A stretch of DNA of 64,000 nt. It comes from Ylistrum balloti (taxonomy: Eukaryota). The position numbers and the translations under genes were made by a program. The stretch's first letter is position 1. Every line of letters begins with the position of its first letter. Under the pieces are notes generated by a model that saw only the letters and a program-made list of their open reading frames with translations, ran no database searches and was not told the DNA's origin. The DNA lies in assembly GCF_031769215.1 (NCBI RefSeq), contig NW_026781915.1:1054001-1118000 (forward strand). Reading direction: 5' to 3'. This document shows positions 4,811 to 14,152 of the stretch, one piece after another.

Positions 4811-7772
4811 GTTGAAAAATTAATATGGTTTTTGTTGTAATGCTGTTGGTTAAACAAGTATATCCTCATGGTGCTGACTACAAAACAGGCCAATGATACT
4901 TAGGGAAATATGACAAATATGACAATGGTGATCACACGACCTACCTAAAATGGTGACATTGTAACAGTACTTTTCAGGGCTAGCTCTGGCTTTAAAATTT
5001 TATTCGCTAAATTCTGAAAATTCTGAAAACTGGTTATGGTTTTACGCAACAGAATTGCCAATTGATTCATTAAACCTTCAGCCCATTATTCTTTGTATAG
5101 TACTTTAGTTTAAAATTGTAAAATTTATTAGAAATTTTTTTTTATTGAAGTATTGTTTAAAATTTGAGAAGAAAAAGGAGAAGAAAGTCAGTGAATTTTT
5201 GTAAAGAATTATTTAAGCTCCCATACAGATATATGGATGGATAATCCATAAATGAATACAGGTAAAAAGAAATACAGTCCAATGATTTATCAACAACTTT
5301 TATAAATTTAAAGAATTATTTCAGCTTAATGAAGTAAAACAAATAATGATGACTGTTGATTTTAGCCATTGGAGCAATGAAATATCAGTGTATTTTGGCA
5401 ATTTTGCACTTCTGCCAATGTTTTTGTATAGGAACACTATTGGAATGTTGGAATGTGAGGTTTTATACTGAAATTTGTTTTGTCGCTCAGTGTACAGAGT
5501 TATGGCCCTTTGTTTAGCAGGAGGCTGGAATGTCTTGGTGAGAGACAGTTCTGTGTTGTTTGGTAAGAAGTCCTTGGGAGATTTGTTTCATACATAGAAG
5601 AGGCTGTTTGTTTATTGTTTGTTAATTGATTATAATGATATTATTATAGGTTATTATCGTTGTTTATTTATATGTTATTGTATTAATCATCAGTGGTCTC
5701 CCTTACCTGTTGACTACATGCAGCATTGGAGATTTTCTCAGGTTTGTCACAGGACACATTTCAACCATTCTGCATGCCGGAGACCTTGTGTTGTTGTGTT
5801 ACCCTCCTATAGCCTTGATACCCTCTATGCCTTCTCCCCTTATCAGCATCACAATAGATTCATTCTAATGTATACACTGTCTGGCTGGATGTCAGTAATC
5901 ATTATATGTTCTTATTGTGATTCTATGGCTGAGTTTAATTTGATTTGAGGATGAATGTATCCAGCAAATTGTCACTTAGGTATTCATCTTTATCCTACAA
6001 TAAGTCAATAGAGGTAAACACATTTGGTTCAAAGTTAAGGGGTTGTCCGTATAAGAAGTAAAGTAGTGTTGTAATGCTTCTGAACAGCAGGAGATATGGG
6101 TGGGCTTATTAGCAAGCAGGGGAAAATTAAAAAGAAATTGTAACATCTTGCTATGCTAGATATAGTTACTGATGACATAATTGTGATATGGTGTTATGCT
6201 AGTTTAAGGTCTATTTAATGTACATGGGTTGGGTATCTCATCAGATTAGGGAAACAACACAATTGATAGAATTGATAATTTTGATAGTCGAGAGAAGTTG
6301 TATACATACAATGCAATATTAATTACTTAAAAACAAGGGACATGAAAAATTGTTATCTAAAATAAAGGGAAATAAAAGAAATTTAAGAAATAAGTAATAT
6401 GCAAGTTGTTTTTATTTTTTCTTTGTTAATTTGTTTGCAATAACTAATTAAGACGGTACAGGTACATTTCAGTCCAGCAAACCTCTCAGATCTAGTGATG
6501 TGGAGGGCCTTAGTTCAGACCTTGTTTTGATACATATCATGTGTATCTGTTTGTGTATTTATTGTTTTCGGTTGGTTGACTTTAGTAATATATCGATGGT
6601 AATCTACACTAGATAATTGATAGCCACCCCCTATGCATGTTCAATATGTCTGTCTAAAGACCTTCCTTTAAGTTTATTACCTGTTTCTTTAGTATCGATC
6701 ATGCACATTCCATTTGCATTGTCATATTATTTGAATTATTTTTATTTTTATGTGTATTTTGTGTGATTACCATTTTGTTTCACTAATGCATGCTTATTTT
6801 TATAAATAAATACAAAGTTTGCACCATATGACTTCATCCAATATGGTTCTACTAGGTTGGAAAGTGAACAAGCATGCCTGAGTTACCTCCCTTCATCTGA
6901 TACTAACTAGTCTACATGTCAAAAAAGATAGTCTACATTAGAATGAAAGTTTATCAAATTGAATTTTATGCATCAAAGATTTCCAAAATATTTCAATTTT
7001 TGGTAGGTTTTATAATATTTTTTATTATCATCAATGTTTCCAGCATGGAAATATGATAAATTTGATAAGATGTGATGAAAAAAATGAATAGATTAAAGTT
7101 TGATGTGTAAGCCAGAGATGTCAACCACTCCAATTTGGGCAGAGTTTCCTCCGATTTTTATCCTTACTAAGCAGTGTACTGATAAATGGTCCATGCATTT
7201 TTGTCCTGCTTGAAGCATGAATATAGCTTAGTAGTAGACTCCATAATGAAAAAAAAATCTTTATTCTGTTGTACATGTTTTGAGTATTGAAAAAACACAT
7301 AACTGTGTTTGTAGGTAAAGAAATAATTCATGGTAGGTATAATTGATAACCAAGATTATTACGTTTATAAGGATTTGTTGGAGTAAGTATTAAACTTGAC
7401 TTAAGGAAGATGGAGTAGGTAAAAAAATTCAATTGAGTCCAACTAATGAATGTTATATACGATAATATCACTGATGTAGTGTTTTTACAGGAATTATATT
7501 GATATATAATGTTCTAGCATGAAAGAGACAGAGGCAATGATGAATGACAAATGTTAGAACATATATTAACATATTTCTATGCTTCATTTCACACATGTGG
7601 TATCATTTATTATATTTACCTATGTATATACAGTATATAAGTTATTTTATGTGCCTTTAATAGGTGAGCTACATGCATTGACTTGTGATTTTGTGAACCT
7701 TTGGTGTCTGACTTTTTAATTACATTTATGGCCAGCTTGCTTATTTTGTAATGAGATTCTCTTTTTCTTCAG

Positions 7773-7862
7773 GCTGGACGACGGATATTGGATCTTTATA
7801 GTGACCTCAAAGATGGACATAACCTGATATCTCTGTTAGAAGTGCTGGCTCACGAATCATTG
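7773..7862 (+). CDS. DST: Spectraplakin (dystonin/MACF1/plectin/shot family) internal exon, CH1 domain: AGRRILDLYSDLKDGHNLISLLEVLAHESL
   Basis: Acceptor ttctctttttcttcag at 7757-7772 and donor GTAAGG at 7863; 90 nt, phase 0-0. Translation matches the plakin CH1 motif DLYxDLxDGHNLISLLEVL. The symbol is nominal: the paralogues cannot be distinguished here, and invertebrates typically have one shot-like gene. Confidence 0.96.
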
Positions 7863-7892
7863 GTAAGGATTTCATATTGTGTGTGGTTTCAG

Positions 7893-8200
7893 GTAAGGAT
7901 GTGGTGCCATTTGTGGTACCTGTTTAGGATGTGGTGCCATTTGTGGTACCTGTTTAGGATGTGATGCATTTTGTGGTACCTGATAAGAATATGGTGCCAT
8001 TTGTGGTACCTGTTAAGGATATGATGCCACAGGATATGATGCCACAGGATATGATGCCGTTTGTGGTACCTGTTCGGGATGTGGTGCCATTTGTGATATT
8101 TGTTAAGGATGTGGTGCCATTTGTGGTACCTGTTAAGGATGTGGCACCATTTGTGGTACCTGTGAAGAATATGATACAGTTAATGGTACATGATAAGGAT
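7893..8200 (+). repeat. 30-bp minisatellite (aggatgtggtgccatttgtggtacctgttt/a), about 10 units
   Basis: Direct tandem repeats visible in the sequence; they generate ORF 7961..8233. Confidence 0.9.
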
Positions 8201-8440: not shown

Positions 8441-8560
8441 CTGATCGGACTGCTATGTTAACCTGTCTGTTTTATCATTTTAGCCAAGAGAGAAGGGTAA
8501 TTAATCTGACTGTTATGTTAACCAGTCTGTTTTATCGTTTTAGCCAAGAGAGAAAGGTCG
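8441..8560 (+). repeat. 60-bp tandem duplication including the splice acceptor of exon 8544
   Basis: 8441-8500 and 8501-8560 align at period 60: gactgctatgttaacctgtctgttttatcattttagccaagagagaagg versus gactgttatgttaaccagtctgttttatcgttttagccaagagagaaagg. Confidence 0.92.
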
Positions 8561-8621
8561 CATGAAGTTCCACAAAATTCAAAATGTCCAGATAGCTTTG
8601 GAGTTTCTGGCTCGTAAAGGG
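8544..8621 (+). CDS. DST: Spectraplakin exon, CH1 domain: [26 protein letters not shown]
   Basis: Acceptor tcgttttag and donor GTAGGT at 8622; 78 nt, phase 0-0. Matches the family motif PREKGRMRFHxLQNVQIAL. Confidence 0.96.
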
Positions 8622-8737
8622 GTAGGTATAATGATATAGTAATCATACATAGAGGTAAAGGCATTGTCTTTCTTTTACAGCTTAATTCTGACTATTGTGA
8701 CTGACTGAGGATGTGTGTCTCCAGACACAGGGGTGGT

Positions 8738-11300
8738 ATGGGTTTGACACCTGACACAGCTGACTGGGGTATGGAGTTGATGCCTGACAAAGCTGACTGG
8801 GGTATGGAGTTGATGCCTGACACAGCTGACTTGGGTATGGAGTTGATACCTGACACAGCTGACTGGGGTATGGAGTTGATGCCTGACACAGCTGACTGGG
8901 GTATGGAGTTGATGCCTGACACAGCTGACAGGGGTATGGAGTTGATGCCTGACACAGCTGACTGGGGTATGGGTTTGACACCTGACACAGCTGACTGGGG
9001 TATGGAGTTGATGCCTGACAAAGCTGACTGGGGTATGGAGTTGATGCCTGACACAGCTGACTTGGGTATGGAGTTGATACCTGACACAGCTGACTGGGGT
9101 ATGGAGTTGATGCCTGACACAGCTGACTGGGGTATGGAGTTGATGCCTGACACAGCTGACTGGGGTATGGAGTTGATGCCTGACACAGCTGACTGGGGTA
9201 TGGGTTTGACACCTGACACAGCTGACTGGGGTATGGAGTTGATGCCTGACAAAGCTGACTGGGGTATGGAGTTGATGCCTGACACAGCTGACTTGGGTAT
9301 GGAGTTGAAACCTGACACAGCTGACTGGGGTATGGAGTCTATGCCTGACACAGCTGACTGGGGTATGGAGTTGATGCCTGACACAGCTGACTGGGGTATG
9401 GGTTTGACACCTGACACAGCTGACTGGGGTATGGAGTTGATGCCTGACAAAGCTGACTGGGGTATGGAGTTGATGCCTGACACAGCTGACTTGGGTATGG
9501 AGTTGATACCTGACACAGCTGACTGGGGTATTGAGTTGATGCCTGACACAGCTGACTGTGGTATGGAGTTGACGCCCGACACAGATGACTGGGGTATGGA
9601 GTTGATGCCTGACACAGCTGACTGGGGTATGGAGTTGATGCCTGACACAGCTGACTGGGGTATGGAGTTGATGCCTGACACAGCTTAATGTGGTATGGAG
9701 TTGATGCCTGACACAGCTGACTGGGGTATGGAGTTGATGCCTGACACAGCTGACTGGGGTATGGAGTTGATGCCTGACACAGCTGACTGGGGTATGGAGT
9801 TGATGCCTGACACAGCTGACTGGGGTATGGAGTTGATGCCTGACACAGCTGACTGGGGTATGGAGTTGATGCCTGACACAGCTGACTGGGGTATGGAGTT
9901 GATGCCTGACACAGCTGACTGGGGTATGGAGTTGATGCCTGACACAGCTGACTGGGGTATGGAGTTGATGCCTGACACAGCTGACTGGGGTATGGAGTTG
10001 ATGCCTGACACAGCTGACTGGGGTATGGAGTTGATGCCTGACACAGCTGACTGGGGTATGGAGTTGACGCCCGACACAGATGACTGGGGTATGGAGTTGA
10101 TGCCTGACACAGCTGACTGGGGTATGGAGTTGATGCCTGACACAGCTGACTGGGGTATGGAGTTGATGCCTAACACAGCTGATTGAGGTGAGGAGTTGAT
10201 GCCCGACACAGCTGACTGGGATATGGAGTTGATGCCTGACACAGCTGACTGGGGTATGGAGGTGATGCCTGACACAGCTGACTGGGGTATGGAGTTGATG
10301 CCTGACACAGCTGACTGGGGTATGGAGTTGATGCCTGACACAGCTGACTGGGGTATGGAGTTGATGCCTGACACAGCTGACTGGGGTATGGAGTTGATGC
10401 CTGACACAGCTGACTGGGGTATGGAGTTGATGCCTGACACAGCTGACTGGGGTATGGAGTTGATGCCTGACACAGCTGACTGGGGTATGGAGTTGATGCC
10501 TGACACAGCTGACTGGGGTATGGAGTTGATGCCTGACACAGCTGACTGGGGTATTGAGTTGTTGCCTGAAACAGCTGACTGGGGTATGGAGTTGATGCCT
10601 GACACAGCTGACTGGGGTATGGAGTTGATGCCTAACACAGCTGATTGAGGTGAGGAGTTGATGCCCGACACAGCTGACTGGGATATGGAGTTGATGCCTA
10701 ATACAGGTGACTGGATTATGGAGTTGATGCCTGACACAGATGACTGGGGTATGGAGTTGATGCCTGACACGGCTGACTGAGGTATGGAGTTGATGCCTGA
10801 CACGGCTGACTGAGGTATGGAGTTGATGTCTGATATAGCTGACTGGGTTATGGAGTTGATGCCTGACACAGCTATCTGGGGTGTGGAGTTGATACCTGAC
10901 ACAGCTGACTTGGGTATGGAGTTGATGCCTGACACAGCTGACTGGGGTGTGGAGTTGATGCCTGACACAGCTGACTGGGGTATGGAGGTGATGCCTGACA
11001 CAGCTGACTGGGGTATGGAGTTGATGCCTGACACAGCTGACTGGGGTATGGAGTTGATGCCTGACACAGCTGACTGGGGTATGGAGTTGATGCCTGACAC
11101 AGCTGACTGGGGTATGGAGTTGATGCCTGACACAGCTGACTGGGGTATGGAGTTGATGCCTGACACAGCTGACTGGGGTATGGAGTTGATGCCTGACACA
11201 GCTGACTGGGGTATGGAGTTGATGCCTGACACAGCTGACTGGGGTATGGAGTTGATGCCTGACACAGCTGACTGGGGTATGGAGTTGATGCCTGACATAG
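8738..11300 (+). repeat. 33-bp minisatellite (atggagttgatgcctgacacagctgactggggt), about 78 units, with higher-order structure
   Basis: Very homogeneous tandem array; explains the ORFs 8675..11323, 8692..9681, 8711..9688, 9685..11298 and others. Confidence 0.98.
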
Positions 11301-14059
11301 CTGGAGGAGAGCTTTAAATCCAAAATAGTGTTGTAATGTCTACTGCATCAGCTTAGCTAATGGTTTAATACTTGAGACAGCAGACATATAGGATATGTTG
11401 AGACCATTTAGAAGAAAACAAGTGTCATTAGCTGAAGACATTTGTTTCTTGAGTAAAAAAAACACTAGATTATTGTTCTCTGAAATAATATGGTGGGGTA
11501 ATGAAGCTATTCATGTCTACCGGTATGTGTAGGTCTTGATAATAATCAGAAAGATAAAGAGTTAGTGTTCATTTCAGTCCTATCTGTCTTAACACAGCTG
11601 TTCATGTAGATTATAATCCCATGGAGATTGTAATTAATTTTTTTAATAGAGTTTCTTACTCCCTTTGAGATTTTTGCATTTCAATGTTTATTTATTAACT
11701 TTCCAGGTTAACAGATAATTGAAGTATGTTTACCGAGTTTTGTTGAAATTAAACATTGTGATCTTCTCTCTAAACATTTGAGAAAATATCATGAACACAT
11801 GATAATAGCATCTTGTAACAAAGTTAGGGGGTTTATTGGAATCAGGTTGTATGAGATGGCCCTATAGACAACAGTACTATTTTTCTTTATTATTTTTATA
11901 ATTTTCTTAATTCAGAATAATCACTAGAAGACAAAACCTCCTTAATTTTTTTACCCAGTAAGTAAATACAACATTGTAATTTAAGCGGTGTATAAGTAAC
12001 ATATATTCTAAATTAACATTAAAACACATAAATTACAACACACAGGTGTTGTTAAAAAAAAGTACAACTTAGTTCAATCATTAATTGATATATAAATTAC
12101 ATTGATGATATAATCCTAAGCTGTTCCAAGCTAATACAATATAGCTTGTTAATTACTGGTCCAGAGGCTGAAGCCAACACCTGTAAACAAAAGAATTTCT
12201 ATCAGTCTCTAGTGTGCTACAAAGATAAGCTAACAACATTCCAGACTTCACAATCTTGTTTTTGGTTGGAGTTTAAATAGTTTTTTCACATCTTACATCT
12301 TTGTTATTGTCTAGCAGAAATAGTTGCAAATAACTCACAAACAACGCCTATTGACTGAATTGGAGAAGACTAGTACCACTGTAGGTCTGTGCACAGTCGT
12401 AAAGTGTACAATAAAAAAACGGTTTCAGGGCAGGAATGCTAGAGATGTGGACATTTGAAAGCTTCATTTACACTTCTGAAGTATTTGGAGGAGAATCCTG
12501 ATTTTGGAGTTGTAGGAACTAATGGTTATTAAATGAACACAAATGTCAATTTTTTTGTTGATATCGTAATCCATCAACAACAGGTGCATTATTTGTCTAG
12601 TACAAGCGTACTCTTTGTTTGTATGGAAATCCACTAAGTTTTGAAGTCAGGGGTTGAGTTTGGTTTTGAATTTTTTAACTACATTATTAAATATTAACTT
12701 CTTCAAACAATCTGTTTATGATACTTTAAGTAAATATTTGGTTGCAGGAAAGATAATTTCTCCATCCTTTTAAGTTATTATATCCAATTCTCGTTAATTT
12801 TGATGACAATGAGAAATGATATGATCCTGATAACTTATACAGTTGATAATGATGCTGAGGACTTTGACACTGTTCAGGATGATTTTACCAAACGGATGAC
12901 CTTGACAAACATTGATCATGCTGACTTGAAGGATGTATGAAACTCATATTTGACCAGAAATAGAACTGGACTGTAAACAAATTATATAACTTAATATCAT
13001 ATTGACTTCTGCATTTTGATAGACTTTTTACCATTACTTGTACCCCCCCCCCCACCCGCCCAATCCGCCACCCCTCCCCCTCTTTCCCAGCAGTGGAGCA
13101 CTTAATATGATGTTCTATGGAATTTTTCCTCTGGACTACATTAACCCCACCCCATTTGAGCTAAAATTTTGGTTGGAATGTTAAGGAAAGGCAGTCAAAA
13201 AAAGTGTTGTAAATTTTCAACATGGCAGCCAAGGAGGATATTTTGTAATATGATTGTGCAATCATGGTTTTCCTGTGTGACACCCATTTCAAACTTCTTC
13301 TCAAGTTTCTCCAATGGGATTAAGCTACAGCTCTGATATGATGTGTGTTGATGATAATGACAAAGTTGACATTTTTGACACCTGTTTAAGATGAGGAGTT
13401 TGATATAGTGATATTTGATGTTTTGTTACCATGGTGATCAACTACTTTGTTTATTTGTTTGACATTTTAATGTTGACGTTTTGTATTTTCTTAGTTATTG
13501 AAACTGAAAACAGATATGTGTATATTGTAAAAGGCTTTACTCTCTGAGGGTGGCCTTACCAGTAAGTGGCTCCAAGAATGTTCTAGGGTAGTGATGTATT
13601 ACTTAAGTCCTTGTCATAACTTGTGAATGTATTGTCATAGTAACCTTAGTACAGCAGTATGAAATAGGATTATATTGACTGTAAAACACACCGATCTACC
13701 ACCGATACACAGAAATTTTCGTGGTTTTTACATTGTTTAGTAAGTCAGGTTTAAATAGAAAAGTTGTTATCACAGCGAATTTGTTGATTTGTTTCAAGAT
13801 AACTACAGAAATGTAATGAATTTTACAAAAACATCATAAAAGTAAGCACCAGTAGAACTGCATTTTACCAACATGGTAGATAAGTTATAAACTGTGGTAT
13901 TTCACCCCCTCCCACCCATCCGCCTACCTTGTAAACTTATATTTGTTTACTGCCAACATTGGTTATACATAACTGGGAGAGATTTACCCAGGGGTGACTT
14001 AGGTTAAAGTTTTATTTTTGAAATACTTGAAATATATTTTTAATTCTCTTTTTTTTCAG

Positions 14060-14152
14060 ATCAAACTTGTAAACATTCGATCAGATGAAATTGTTGATGG
14101 CAACCCAAAACTGACGCTTGGTCTCATCTGGACCATCATCCTTCATTTCCAG
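14060..14152 (+). CDS. DST: Spectraplakin exon, end of CH1: [31 protein letters not shown]
   Basis: Acceptor ttttttttcag and donor GTAGGT at 14153; 93 nt, phase 0-0. Contains the near-invariant [30 protein letters not shown] motif (seen inside ORF 14018..14356). Confidence 0.98.

What the first reader, a model, noticed from the sequence alone, without database searches (positions are those of the whole stretch)
7863..7898. Minisatellite-derived second donor 30 nt downstream of the CH1 exon would insert VRISYCVWFQ into the actin-binding domain
Seen: the donor TTG|GTAAGG (7863) is followed exactly 30 nt later by a better-consensus CAG|GTAAGG (7893). The intervening GTA AGG ATT TCA TAT TGT GTG TGG TTT CAG is stop-free and in frame, and the 30-nt spacing equals the period of the minisatellite that begins here. 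Known: vertebrate plectin inserts the 12-aa exon 3alpha at this same CH1 junction, and such inserts (2alpha, 3alpha) are reported to modulate actin binding. Inference: an independently evolved, repeat-generated 10-aa insert at the same hot spot.
Basis: partly seen in the sequence, partly recalled or inferred. Interest (0 to 1): 0.7.

Follow-up and report, generated by a model that had tools for sequence, protein, structure and literature searches.

The report
Repeat-born second splice donor, use unproven
A short tandem repeat at the start of an intron in a bivalve cytoskeletal-linker gene has copied the splice donor 30 bases downstream, so a 10-residue insert in the actin-binding domain is possible, but it is absent from related bivalves and from every protein database searched, so it looks like a young by-product rather than an established isoform.

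Summary
The sequence observation is correct. Exon 7773-7862 is 90 nt, phase 0, and matches plectin-type CH1. It ends at TTG|GTAAGGAT. Exactly 30 nt later lies CAG|GTAAGGAT, and the 30 nt between are in frame, stop-free and read VRISYCVWFQ. The second donor sits at the first junction of a 30-nt minisatellite (7894-8167). The 30 nt between the donors are a degenerate copy in register: 18/30 to the repeat consensus, background frequency 1.3e-4.

The second donor is the stronger one by U1 pairing (-11.5 vs -8.5 kcal/mol) and by a simple matrix. Published competition data predict mixed use at 30 nt spacing.

Vertebrate plectin and dystonin/MACF1-type proteins carry their 12-aa 3alpha insert at exactly this junction.

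There is no sign that the insert is an established feature:
- The orthologous introns of Mytilus edulis and Pinctada imbricata have no repeat, no second donor and no similarity.
- None of about 380 retrieved proteins, mollusc ones included, carries the insert.
- The peptide is hydrophobic, with no likeness to the charged 3alpha.

No transcript data could be reached, so use is untested.

Verdict: a lineage-specific, repeat-generated competing donor; a functional isoform is unlikely (about 0.1). This scan had not noted it before on other DNA.

Side finding: a conserved 16-aa cassette exon at the 2alpha position (5694-5741).

The parts
7773..7862 (+). CH1 exon (90 nt, phase 0-0; AGRRILDLYSDLKDGHNLISLLEVLAHESL), homologue of plectin exon 3
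   Evidence: PDB phmmer: plectin ABD chains E about 2e-7. Pfam CH domain, positions 22-48. 26/30 identical to Mytilus galloprovincialis dystonin P0271. The same boundaries are seen in M. edulis and Pinctada and in vertebrate read-through ORFs.
7863..7870 (+). Conserved-position donor TTG|GTAAGGAT
   Evidence: U1 duplex -8.5 kcal/mol, matrix score 3.9 bits. Its position equals the exon end in all relatives.
7863..7892 (+). Unit 0 of the repeat, the candidate 30-nt exon extension (VRISYCVWFQ)
   Evidence: In frame and stop-free. 18/30 to the repeat consensus in register. Beyond GTAA it shows no similarity to the M. edulis or Pinctada intron. Mean hydropathy +0.72, one charged residue.
7893..7900 (+). 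Second donor CAG|GTAAGGAT at the first repeat junction
   Evidence: U1 duplex -11.5 kcal/mol and 8.3 bits, equal to the gene's best constitutive donors. It is the only GT in the intron scoring above 4 bits, apart from the first donor. All later repeat junctions read TT, AT or TG instead of GT.
7894..8167 (+). 30-nt minisatellite, 9.1 copies, with degenerate copies running to about 8222
   Evidence: TRF. The unit is found nowhere else in the window. It is absent from the orthologous introns.
8544..8621 (+). Next CH1 exon (78 nt; [26 protein letters not shown]), acceptor for both donors
   Evidence: 25/26 identical to P0271. Aligns to M. edulis.
8444..8558 (+). 60-nt tandem duplication that copies the acceptor plus the first 13 nt of the exon (context; a separate finding, s1-232097)
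   Evidence: TRF: period 60, 1.9 copies, 90% matches. The upstream copy reads CCA AGA GAG AAG GGT AAT TAA.

Best explanation
The second donor is a real, lineage-specific by-product of minisatellite growth at the 5' end of this intron. The repeat is in register with the authentic donor, so the intronic half of the donor (GTAAGGAT) exists twice, 30 nt apart. The downstream copy happens to follow CAG, which makes it the stronger U1 target.

Inferred mechanism: U1 can bind both sites. At 30 nt spacing, mammalian data predict mixed use, so some mRNAs probably carry the 30-nt extension. That would place a hydrophobic 10-residue stretch in the surface loop between two CH1 helices.

The extension is not conserved, resembles intron rather than coding sequence, and is in no known protein. 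If made, it is most likely young, unselected splicing variation and not an established counterpart of plectin 3alpha.

Shown: the sequence anatomy, the repeat origin, the donor strengths, the absence in two other bivalves, and the location in a loop. Inferred: any use of the site.
For: - Anatomy and register.
- Donor strength.
- Competition rule: with strongly U1-complementary sites the intron-proximal one is preferred, rising beyond about 30 nt separation and near 100% at >=45 nt (PMC3413131).
- Non-conservation: M. edulis donor TTG|GTAATT, with a stop after 7 codons and no array. Between the window and M. edulis only the two exons align. Pinctada donor CTG|GTAACT, intron of 459 nt without repeat. 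Coding exons are 80-88% identical in nucleotides between these species, while the 60 nt after the donor are 16/60.
- No protein carries the insert: representative search of 1.84 billion proteins, two word searches (screened in 25 and 28), and a search with the read-through ORF.
- The loop location: the AlphaFold2 (AF2) model of P0271 CH1 puts the junction L60|P61 in the middle of loop 58-68, between helices 47-57 and 69-85, with block pLDDT about 85.
- The window holds more than 20 minisatellite arrays, so such arrays arise easily here.
Against: - No RNA data for this species could be reached, so both 'never used' and 'mainly used' remain open.
- The competition rule comes from mammalian extracts and HeLa cells, not molluscs.
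- The only outgroups available are deep (mussel, pearl oyster); conservation within the window's own family could not be tested.
- This GT persists at a strong site while all other repeat junctions lack GT. That could mean the site is tolerated or even useful.
- Vertebrate 3alpha shows that this loop accepts inserts.
Confidence: 0.62

Rival explanations
1. One reading: the extension is a functional, regulated alternative isoform that tunes the actin-binding domain, a convergent counterpart of plectin 3alpha.
For: - It sits at the same junction as 3alpha and in a surface loop.
- The donor is strong and in frame.
- The gene has a conserved alternative cassette at the neighbouring 2alpha junction, so splicing in CH1 is used in this lineage.
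- 2alpha and 3alpha change binding properties in plectin (PMC7891324, PMC8464768).
Against: - It is not conserved in M. edulis or Pinctada, whereas the 2alpha-like cassette is.
- The peptide is hydrophobic (7 of 10 residues, one charge), unlike the charged 3alpha.
- Its sequence is a degenerate repeat unit.
- It is in no database protein.
Confidence: 0.1
2. The site is silent. Despite its consensus it is used only at noise level, because context favours the upstream donor (the U-rich stretch right after the first donor, exon-definition signals, or pairing of CAGGUA with the UACCUG present in each repeat unit).
For: - The conserved exon end is 7862 in all relatives.
- Each unit contains TACCTG, the complement of CAGGTA. 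In a 240-nt fold, positions -3 to +2 of the second donor are mostly paired, with unpaired probability 0.02-0.12.
- A deleterious hydrophobic insert would be selected against if it were made in quantity.
Against: - The fold result changes with the length of sequence folded, and the first donor is paired as much.
- The U1 pairing of the second site equals that of the gene's best donors.
- Published competition data favour a strong intron-proximal site.
Confidence: 0.2
3. The downstream donor is the main or only donor in this species, so its CH1 always carries the 10-residue insert.
For: - It is stronger in U1 pairing (-11.5 vs -8.5 kcal/mol) and in matrix score.
- The intron-proximal site is preferred when both sites are strong.
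- The loop tolerates 12 to about 50 extra residues in vertebrate paralogues.
Against: - At 30 nt spacing the proximal preference is only beginning.
- A constitutive hydrophobic insert in a domain that is otherwise 87-92% identical to other bivalves is unlikely to be neutral.
- No relative has any insert there.
Confidence: 0.06
4. Assembly or haplotype peculiarity: the copy number or the first junction of the array is misassembled or polymorphic, so the second donor is not a fixed feature.
For: Minisatellites are hard to assemble and are typically polymorphic (general knowledge). The array has internal irregularities, such as a 15-nt sub-repeat at 8016-8058.
Against: Unit 0 and the first junction are unique sequence with no N and no ambiguity. 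Unit 0 has diverged, which argues for age rather than for a collapse artefact.
Confidence: 0.02

Closest known systems
Vertebrate plectin exon 3alpha, and the equivalent insert of the dystonin/MACF1-type paralogues
   Same: Exactly the same junction in CH1, between the ...SL exon and the PREKG exon (PMC8464768). Short and in frame (12 aa against 10 aa). Lies in the loop between two helices.
   Different: 3alpha is a separate cassette exon, not a donor shift. It is charged (6 of 12 residues; PRERDIIRSSRL), conserved from fish to mammals and across paralogues, and looks like a diverged copy of the start of the next exon. The window's insert is hydrophobic, is a repeat unit, and is absent from other bivalves.
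Alternative or cryptic 5' splice sites in competition (two U1-binding donors a few tens of nt apart)
   Same: Two GT sites with strong U1 complementarity, 30 nt apart, sharing one acceptor. Published behaviour of such pairs: PMC3413131.
   Different: Here the pair arose by tandem duplication of the donor's intronic half. Use is untested, and the rules were measured in mammalian systems.
The 2alpha-position cassette of this same gene (window 5694-5741) and vertebrate plectin 2alpha
   Same: A short optional insert in CH1 at a neighbouring exon junction, in a spectraplakin ABD.
   Different: That cassette is conserved in three bivalve lineages at 41-42/48 nt, with random-level flanks. That is the signature the 7863-7892 extension lacks.

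Membership tests
Plakin-type (spectraplakin) actin-binding domain gene | CH1 and CH2 exons with plakin-type sequence | tested here: met
   Plectin and MACF1 chains are the top PDB matches. Pfam CH domain hits on four exons. The three CH1 exons are 26/30, 25/26 and 29/31 identical to Mytilus galloprovincialis dystonin P0271, and close to Haliotis MACF1-like P0017.
Plectin 3alpha-type insert | Insert at the junction between the ...SL exon and the PREKG exon | tested here: met
   The vertebrate inserts lie exactly at this junction. The window's extension would lie at the same point.
Plectin 3alpha-type insert | Separate cassette exon with its own acceptor and donor | tested here: not met
   The window's insert is a 30-nt extension of the upstream exon through a second donor. 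No conserved block lies inside the intron.
Plectin 3alpha-type insert | Sequence related to PRERD(I/F)...RL | tested here: not met
   VRISYCVWFQ shares nothing with it. Hydropathy is +0.72 against -1.28, and charged residues number 1 against 6.
Plectin 3alpha-type insert | Conserved between species | tested here: not met
   Absent in M. edulis and Pinctada imbricata. Closer relatives were not available.
Plectin 3alpha-type insert | Present in transcripts or proteins | not testable with these tools
   No protein with the insert turned up. No same-species transcript or protein was found at all, so this absence is weak evidence.
Alternative 5' splice site (exon extension) | Two competent donors in the same frame sharing one acceptor | tested here: met
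   both have GTAAGGAT, the spacing is 30 nt, and U1 duplex energies are -8.5 and -11.5 kcal/mol.
Alternative 5' splice site (exon extension) | Both junctions seen in RNA | not testable with these tools
   None of the collections searched yielded any transcript or protein from this species.

The most novel reading that the evidence does not exclude
A minisatellite has just created an in-frame alternative donor that is used in a regulated way. It would add a 10-residue loop to CH1 at the very junction where vertebrates evolved 3alpha. That would be a caught-in-the-act case of convergent, repeat-driven birth of an actin-binding-domain splice variant.
Probability: 0.08. Interest if true: 0.55.

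Novelty: new member of a known kind. Interest (0 to 1): 0.25.

Why it matters
If the site is used, it shows how intronic tandem repeats can duplicate a splice donor and add residues to a conserved domain in one step, at a loop that vertebrates also exploit. As it stands it is a plausible but unproven splice variant of one bivalve gene, of local interest only. Its main practical value is for gene annotation: a predictor may choose the stronger, wrong donor.

The comparison gave two more useful leads. One is a deeply conserved cassette exon at the 2alpha position in bivalves. The other is the hint that vertebrate 3alpha arose as a partial duplicate of the next exon.

Tried and rejected
- RNA folding to see whether one donor is hidden. 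The result changes with the length of sequence folded and both donors are partly paired, so it is not informative.
- Looking up the locus of the closest relative, P0271: not on record.
- Word search with the 69-aa read-through ORF, scored on the exon plus insert: one candidate, nothing at E<=1e-8.
- Search for the repeat unit elsewhere in the window, to test for a dispersed repeat family: it occurs only in this array.
- AF2 model of a 2alpha+3alpha-bearing vertebrate CH1 (P0336). Mean pLDDT is 59 and the insert region is below 50, which shows only that the insert is modelled as a flexible loop.
- A conserved 3alpha-like cassette inside the bivalve intron: none.
- Three paper searches gave nothing: two failed on the search tool's term rules and one returned no papers.
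- MaxEntScan could not be run. The matrix uses donor frequencies recalled from memory, and only positions -3 and -2 differ between the two sites.
The exon plus insert is contiguous genomic sequence and was searched by reference.
- A human plectin fragment (P0137) and other primate entries appeared among the protein hits. They were only part of bulk pattern screens. No human contig was fetched or compared.

Full report
**What is there.** The window carries the actin-binding-domain exons of a plakin-type (spectraplakin) gene on the + strand.
- CH1 exons lie at 7773-7862 (90 nt), 8544-8621 (78 nt) and 14060-14152 (93 nt). CH2 exons lie near 59.2 kb and 63.3 kb.
- The first of these exons matches plectin ABD chains in the PDB at E about 2e-7. 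Four of the five exon pieces submitted (the 26-aa PREKG exon gave none) hit Pfam CH.
- The closest proteins found are bivalve. Mytilus galloprovincialis dystonin P0271 is 26/30, 25/26 and 29/31 identical over the three CH1 exons. Next come M. edulis DST P0003, Pinctada P0005 and Magallana P0007, then gastropod MACF1-like proteins.
- Earlier notes of this scan call the genome a scallop. I did not test that beyond 'pteriomorph-like bivalve, not Mytilus'.

**The observation.**
- TTG|GTAAGGAT with GT at 7863.
- CAG|GTAAGGAT with GT at 7893.
- Ten open codons between them, reading VRISYCVWFQ, in frame with the phase-0 exon before and the phase-0 exon at 8544.

TRF reports a period-30 array from 7894 to 8167. 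Laid out in register, the 30 nt between the donors are a degenerate 'unit 0':
- It is 18/30 identical to the repeat consensus. That level is reached by 1.3e-4 of background 30-mers. Leaving out the shared first 8 nt it is 11/22, p about 0.012.
- GGTAAGGAT occurs only at these two places in 64 kb, and GT sites of this quality occur four times in the window.
- The unit is not found elsewhere in the window.

All later repeat junctions read TT, AT or TG where the donor has GT. The open frame in itself means little.

**Donor strength.** The two sites are identical from -1 to +8 and differ only at -3 and -2.
- Pairing to the U1 5' end is -11.5 kcal/mol for the second site against -8.5 for the first.
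- A simple frequency matrix gives 8.3 against 3.9 bits. The frequencies were recalled from memory, so this is indicative only.
- The second site equals the gene's best constitutive donors, and no other GT in the intron comes close.
- Work from the Eperon laboratory reports three things. Two U1 snRNPs can occupy alternative donors. A strongly complementary intron-proximal site is preferred. With equal sites this preference rises beyond about 30 nt separation and is near complete at 45 nt (PMC3413131).

On that basis mixed use is the expectation here. This is an inference from mammalian systems. RNA folding gave no stable argument either way.

**The comparison with plectin.** Among the short vertebrate proteins retrieved, several carry an insert exactly between ...SL and PREKG:
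- PRERDIIRSSRL or close variants in plectin-type sequences (P0336, P0353, P0359, P0340).
- PRERDFLKTLRL, sometimes followed by 21-38 more residues, in dystonin/MACF1-type sequences (P0302, P0314, P0330, P0332, P0338, P0355).

PMC8464768 places 3alpha between exons 3 and 4. It says 2alpha raises actin binding, and for 3alpha this is only expected. PMC7891324 shows that 2alpha plus 3alpha raise microtubule co-sedimentation. Genomic read-through ORFs from many vertebrates and molluscs show the same exon boundaries. The 'same junction' claim is therefore right.

An AF2 model of the Mytilus CH1 puts the junction in the middle of an 11-residue loop between two helices. A model of a 3alpha-bearing CH1 was of low confidence.

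**Is the insert real biology?** Three lines say it is not an established feature.
- Conservation. The M. edulis locus (L001) has donor TTG|GTAATT, a stop after seven read-through codons, no tandem repeat, and a 1.17-kb intron in which only the two exons align to the window. Pinctada imbricata (L002) has CTG|GTAACT and a plain 459-nt intron. The exons are 80-88% identical in nucleotides between these species, while the 60 nt after the donor are at random level, 16/60.
- Databases. The 40-residue exon-plus-insert found 154 representatives among 1.84 billion, none with the insert. Two word searches added full-length and fragmentary relatives, and none of the mollusc ones has anything at this junction. 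A search with the read-through ORF found nothing. No same-species protein was found at all, so this absence is weak evidence.
- The peptide. It has seven hydrophobic or aromatic residues of ten and one charge. 3alpha has six charges in twelve.

**Verdict.** The donor pair is real and repeat-made, and the second donor is competent on paper. Its use is unknown. It most likely gives young, unselected variation, or nothing. A functional 3alpha-like isoform is possible but unlikely, about 0.1.

**Side observations.**
- Window 5694-5741 (cag|...|gtttgt) encodes WSPLPVDYMQHWRFSQ at the 2alpha position. It is 42/48 nt and 16/16 aa identical in Pinctada, and 41/48 nt and 15/16 aa in M. edulis, with flanks at random level. 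It is included in the M. edulis gene model P0003 and skipped in the Pinctada model P0005.
- That cassette ends in HWR. Vertebrate 2alpha is HWRAE or HWKAE. A louse gene model has an 18-nt HWKYMK exon in the same intron.
- Vertebrate 3alpha resembles the first 12 residues of the exon that follows it: 5/12 identical, shuffle p 1e-4 to 9e-4. The window has a young 60-nt duplication of just that acceptor-plus-exon-start.

Noticed in passing
window 5694-5741 (+); L002:16460-16507; L001:28953-29000: A 48-nt cassette exon (WSPLPVDYMQHWRFSQ) with AG and GT flanks lies in the intron before the 7773 exon, at the plectin-2alpha position. It is 42/48 nt and 16/16 aa identical in Pinctada imbricata, and 41/48 nt and 15/16 aa in Mytilus edulis, while the flanking 60 nt are at random level. 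It is included in the M. edulis model CAG2194122.1 and skipped in the Pinctada model, so it is probably alternative. It is not in the scan's earlier notes.
   Followed up: partly
window 5724-5741; proteins P0336, P0293; L003:7168-7185: The bivalve cassette ends in HWRFSQ. Vertebrate 2alpha is HWRAE or HWKAE, and a louse (Menopon gallinae) gene model, flagged UNVERIFIED_CONTAM in its NCBI record, has an 18-nt exon HWKYMK in the same intron. A shared HW(R/K) motif hints that the 2alpha microexon may be much older than vertebrates. The evidence is thin.
   Followed up: partly
window 8444-8558; proteins P0336, P0302: Vertebrate 3alpha (PRERDIIRSSRL, PRERDFLKTLRL) resembles the first 12 residues of the exon after it (PREKGRMRFHKL): 5/12 identical, shuffle p 1e-4 to 9e-4. 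This suggests 3alpha began as a partial duplication of acceptor plus exon start. The window shows a young 60-nt duplication of exactly that kind, whose upstream copy reads PREKGN-stop.
   Followed up: partly
window 8735-11303 and many other sites: The window holds more than 20 minisatellite arrays with periods of 21-81 nt, including a 33-nt unit repeated 78 times in the next intron. CpG observed/expected is 0.25 and GC is 36%.
   Followed up: no
L003:7845-7950: In the louse locus the ...NL and PRERG parts are continuous in one exon, so the intron at the 3alpha junction is missing there.
   Followed up: no
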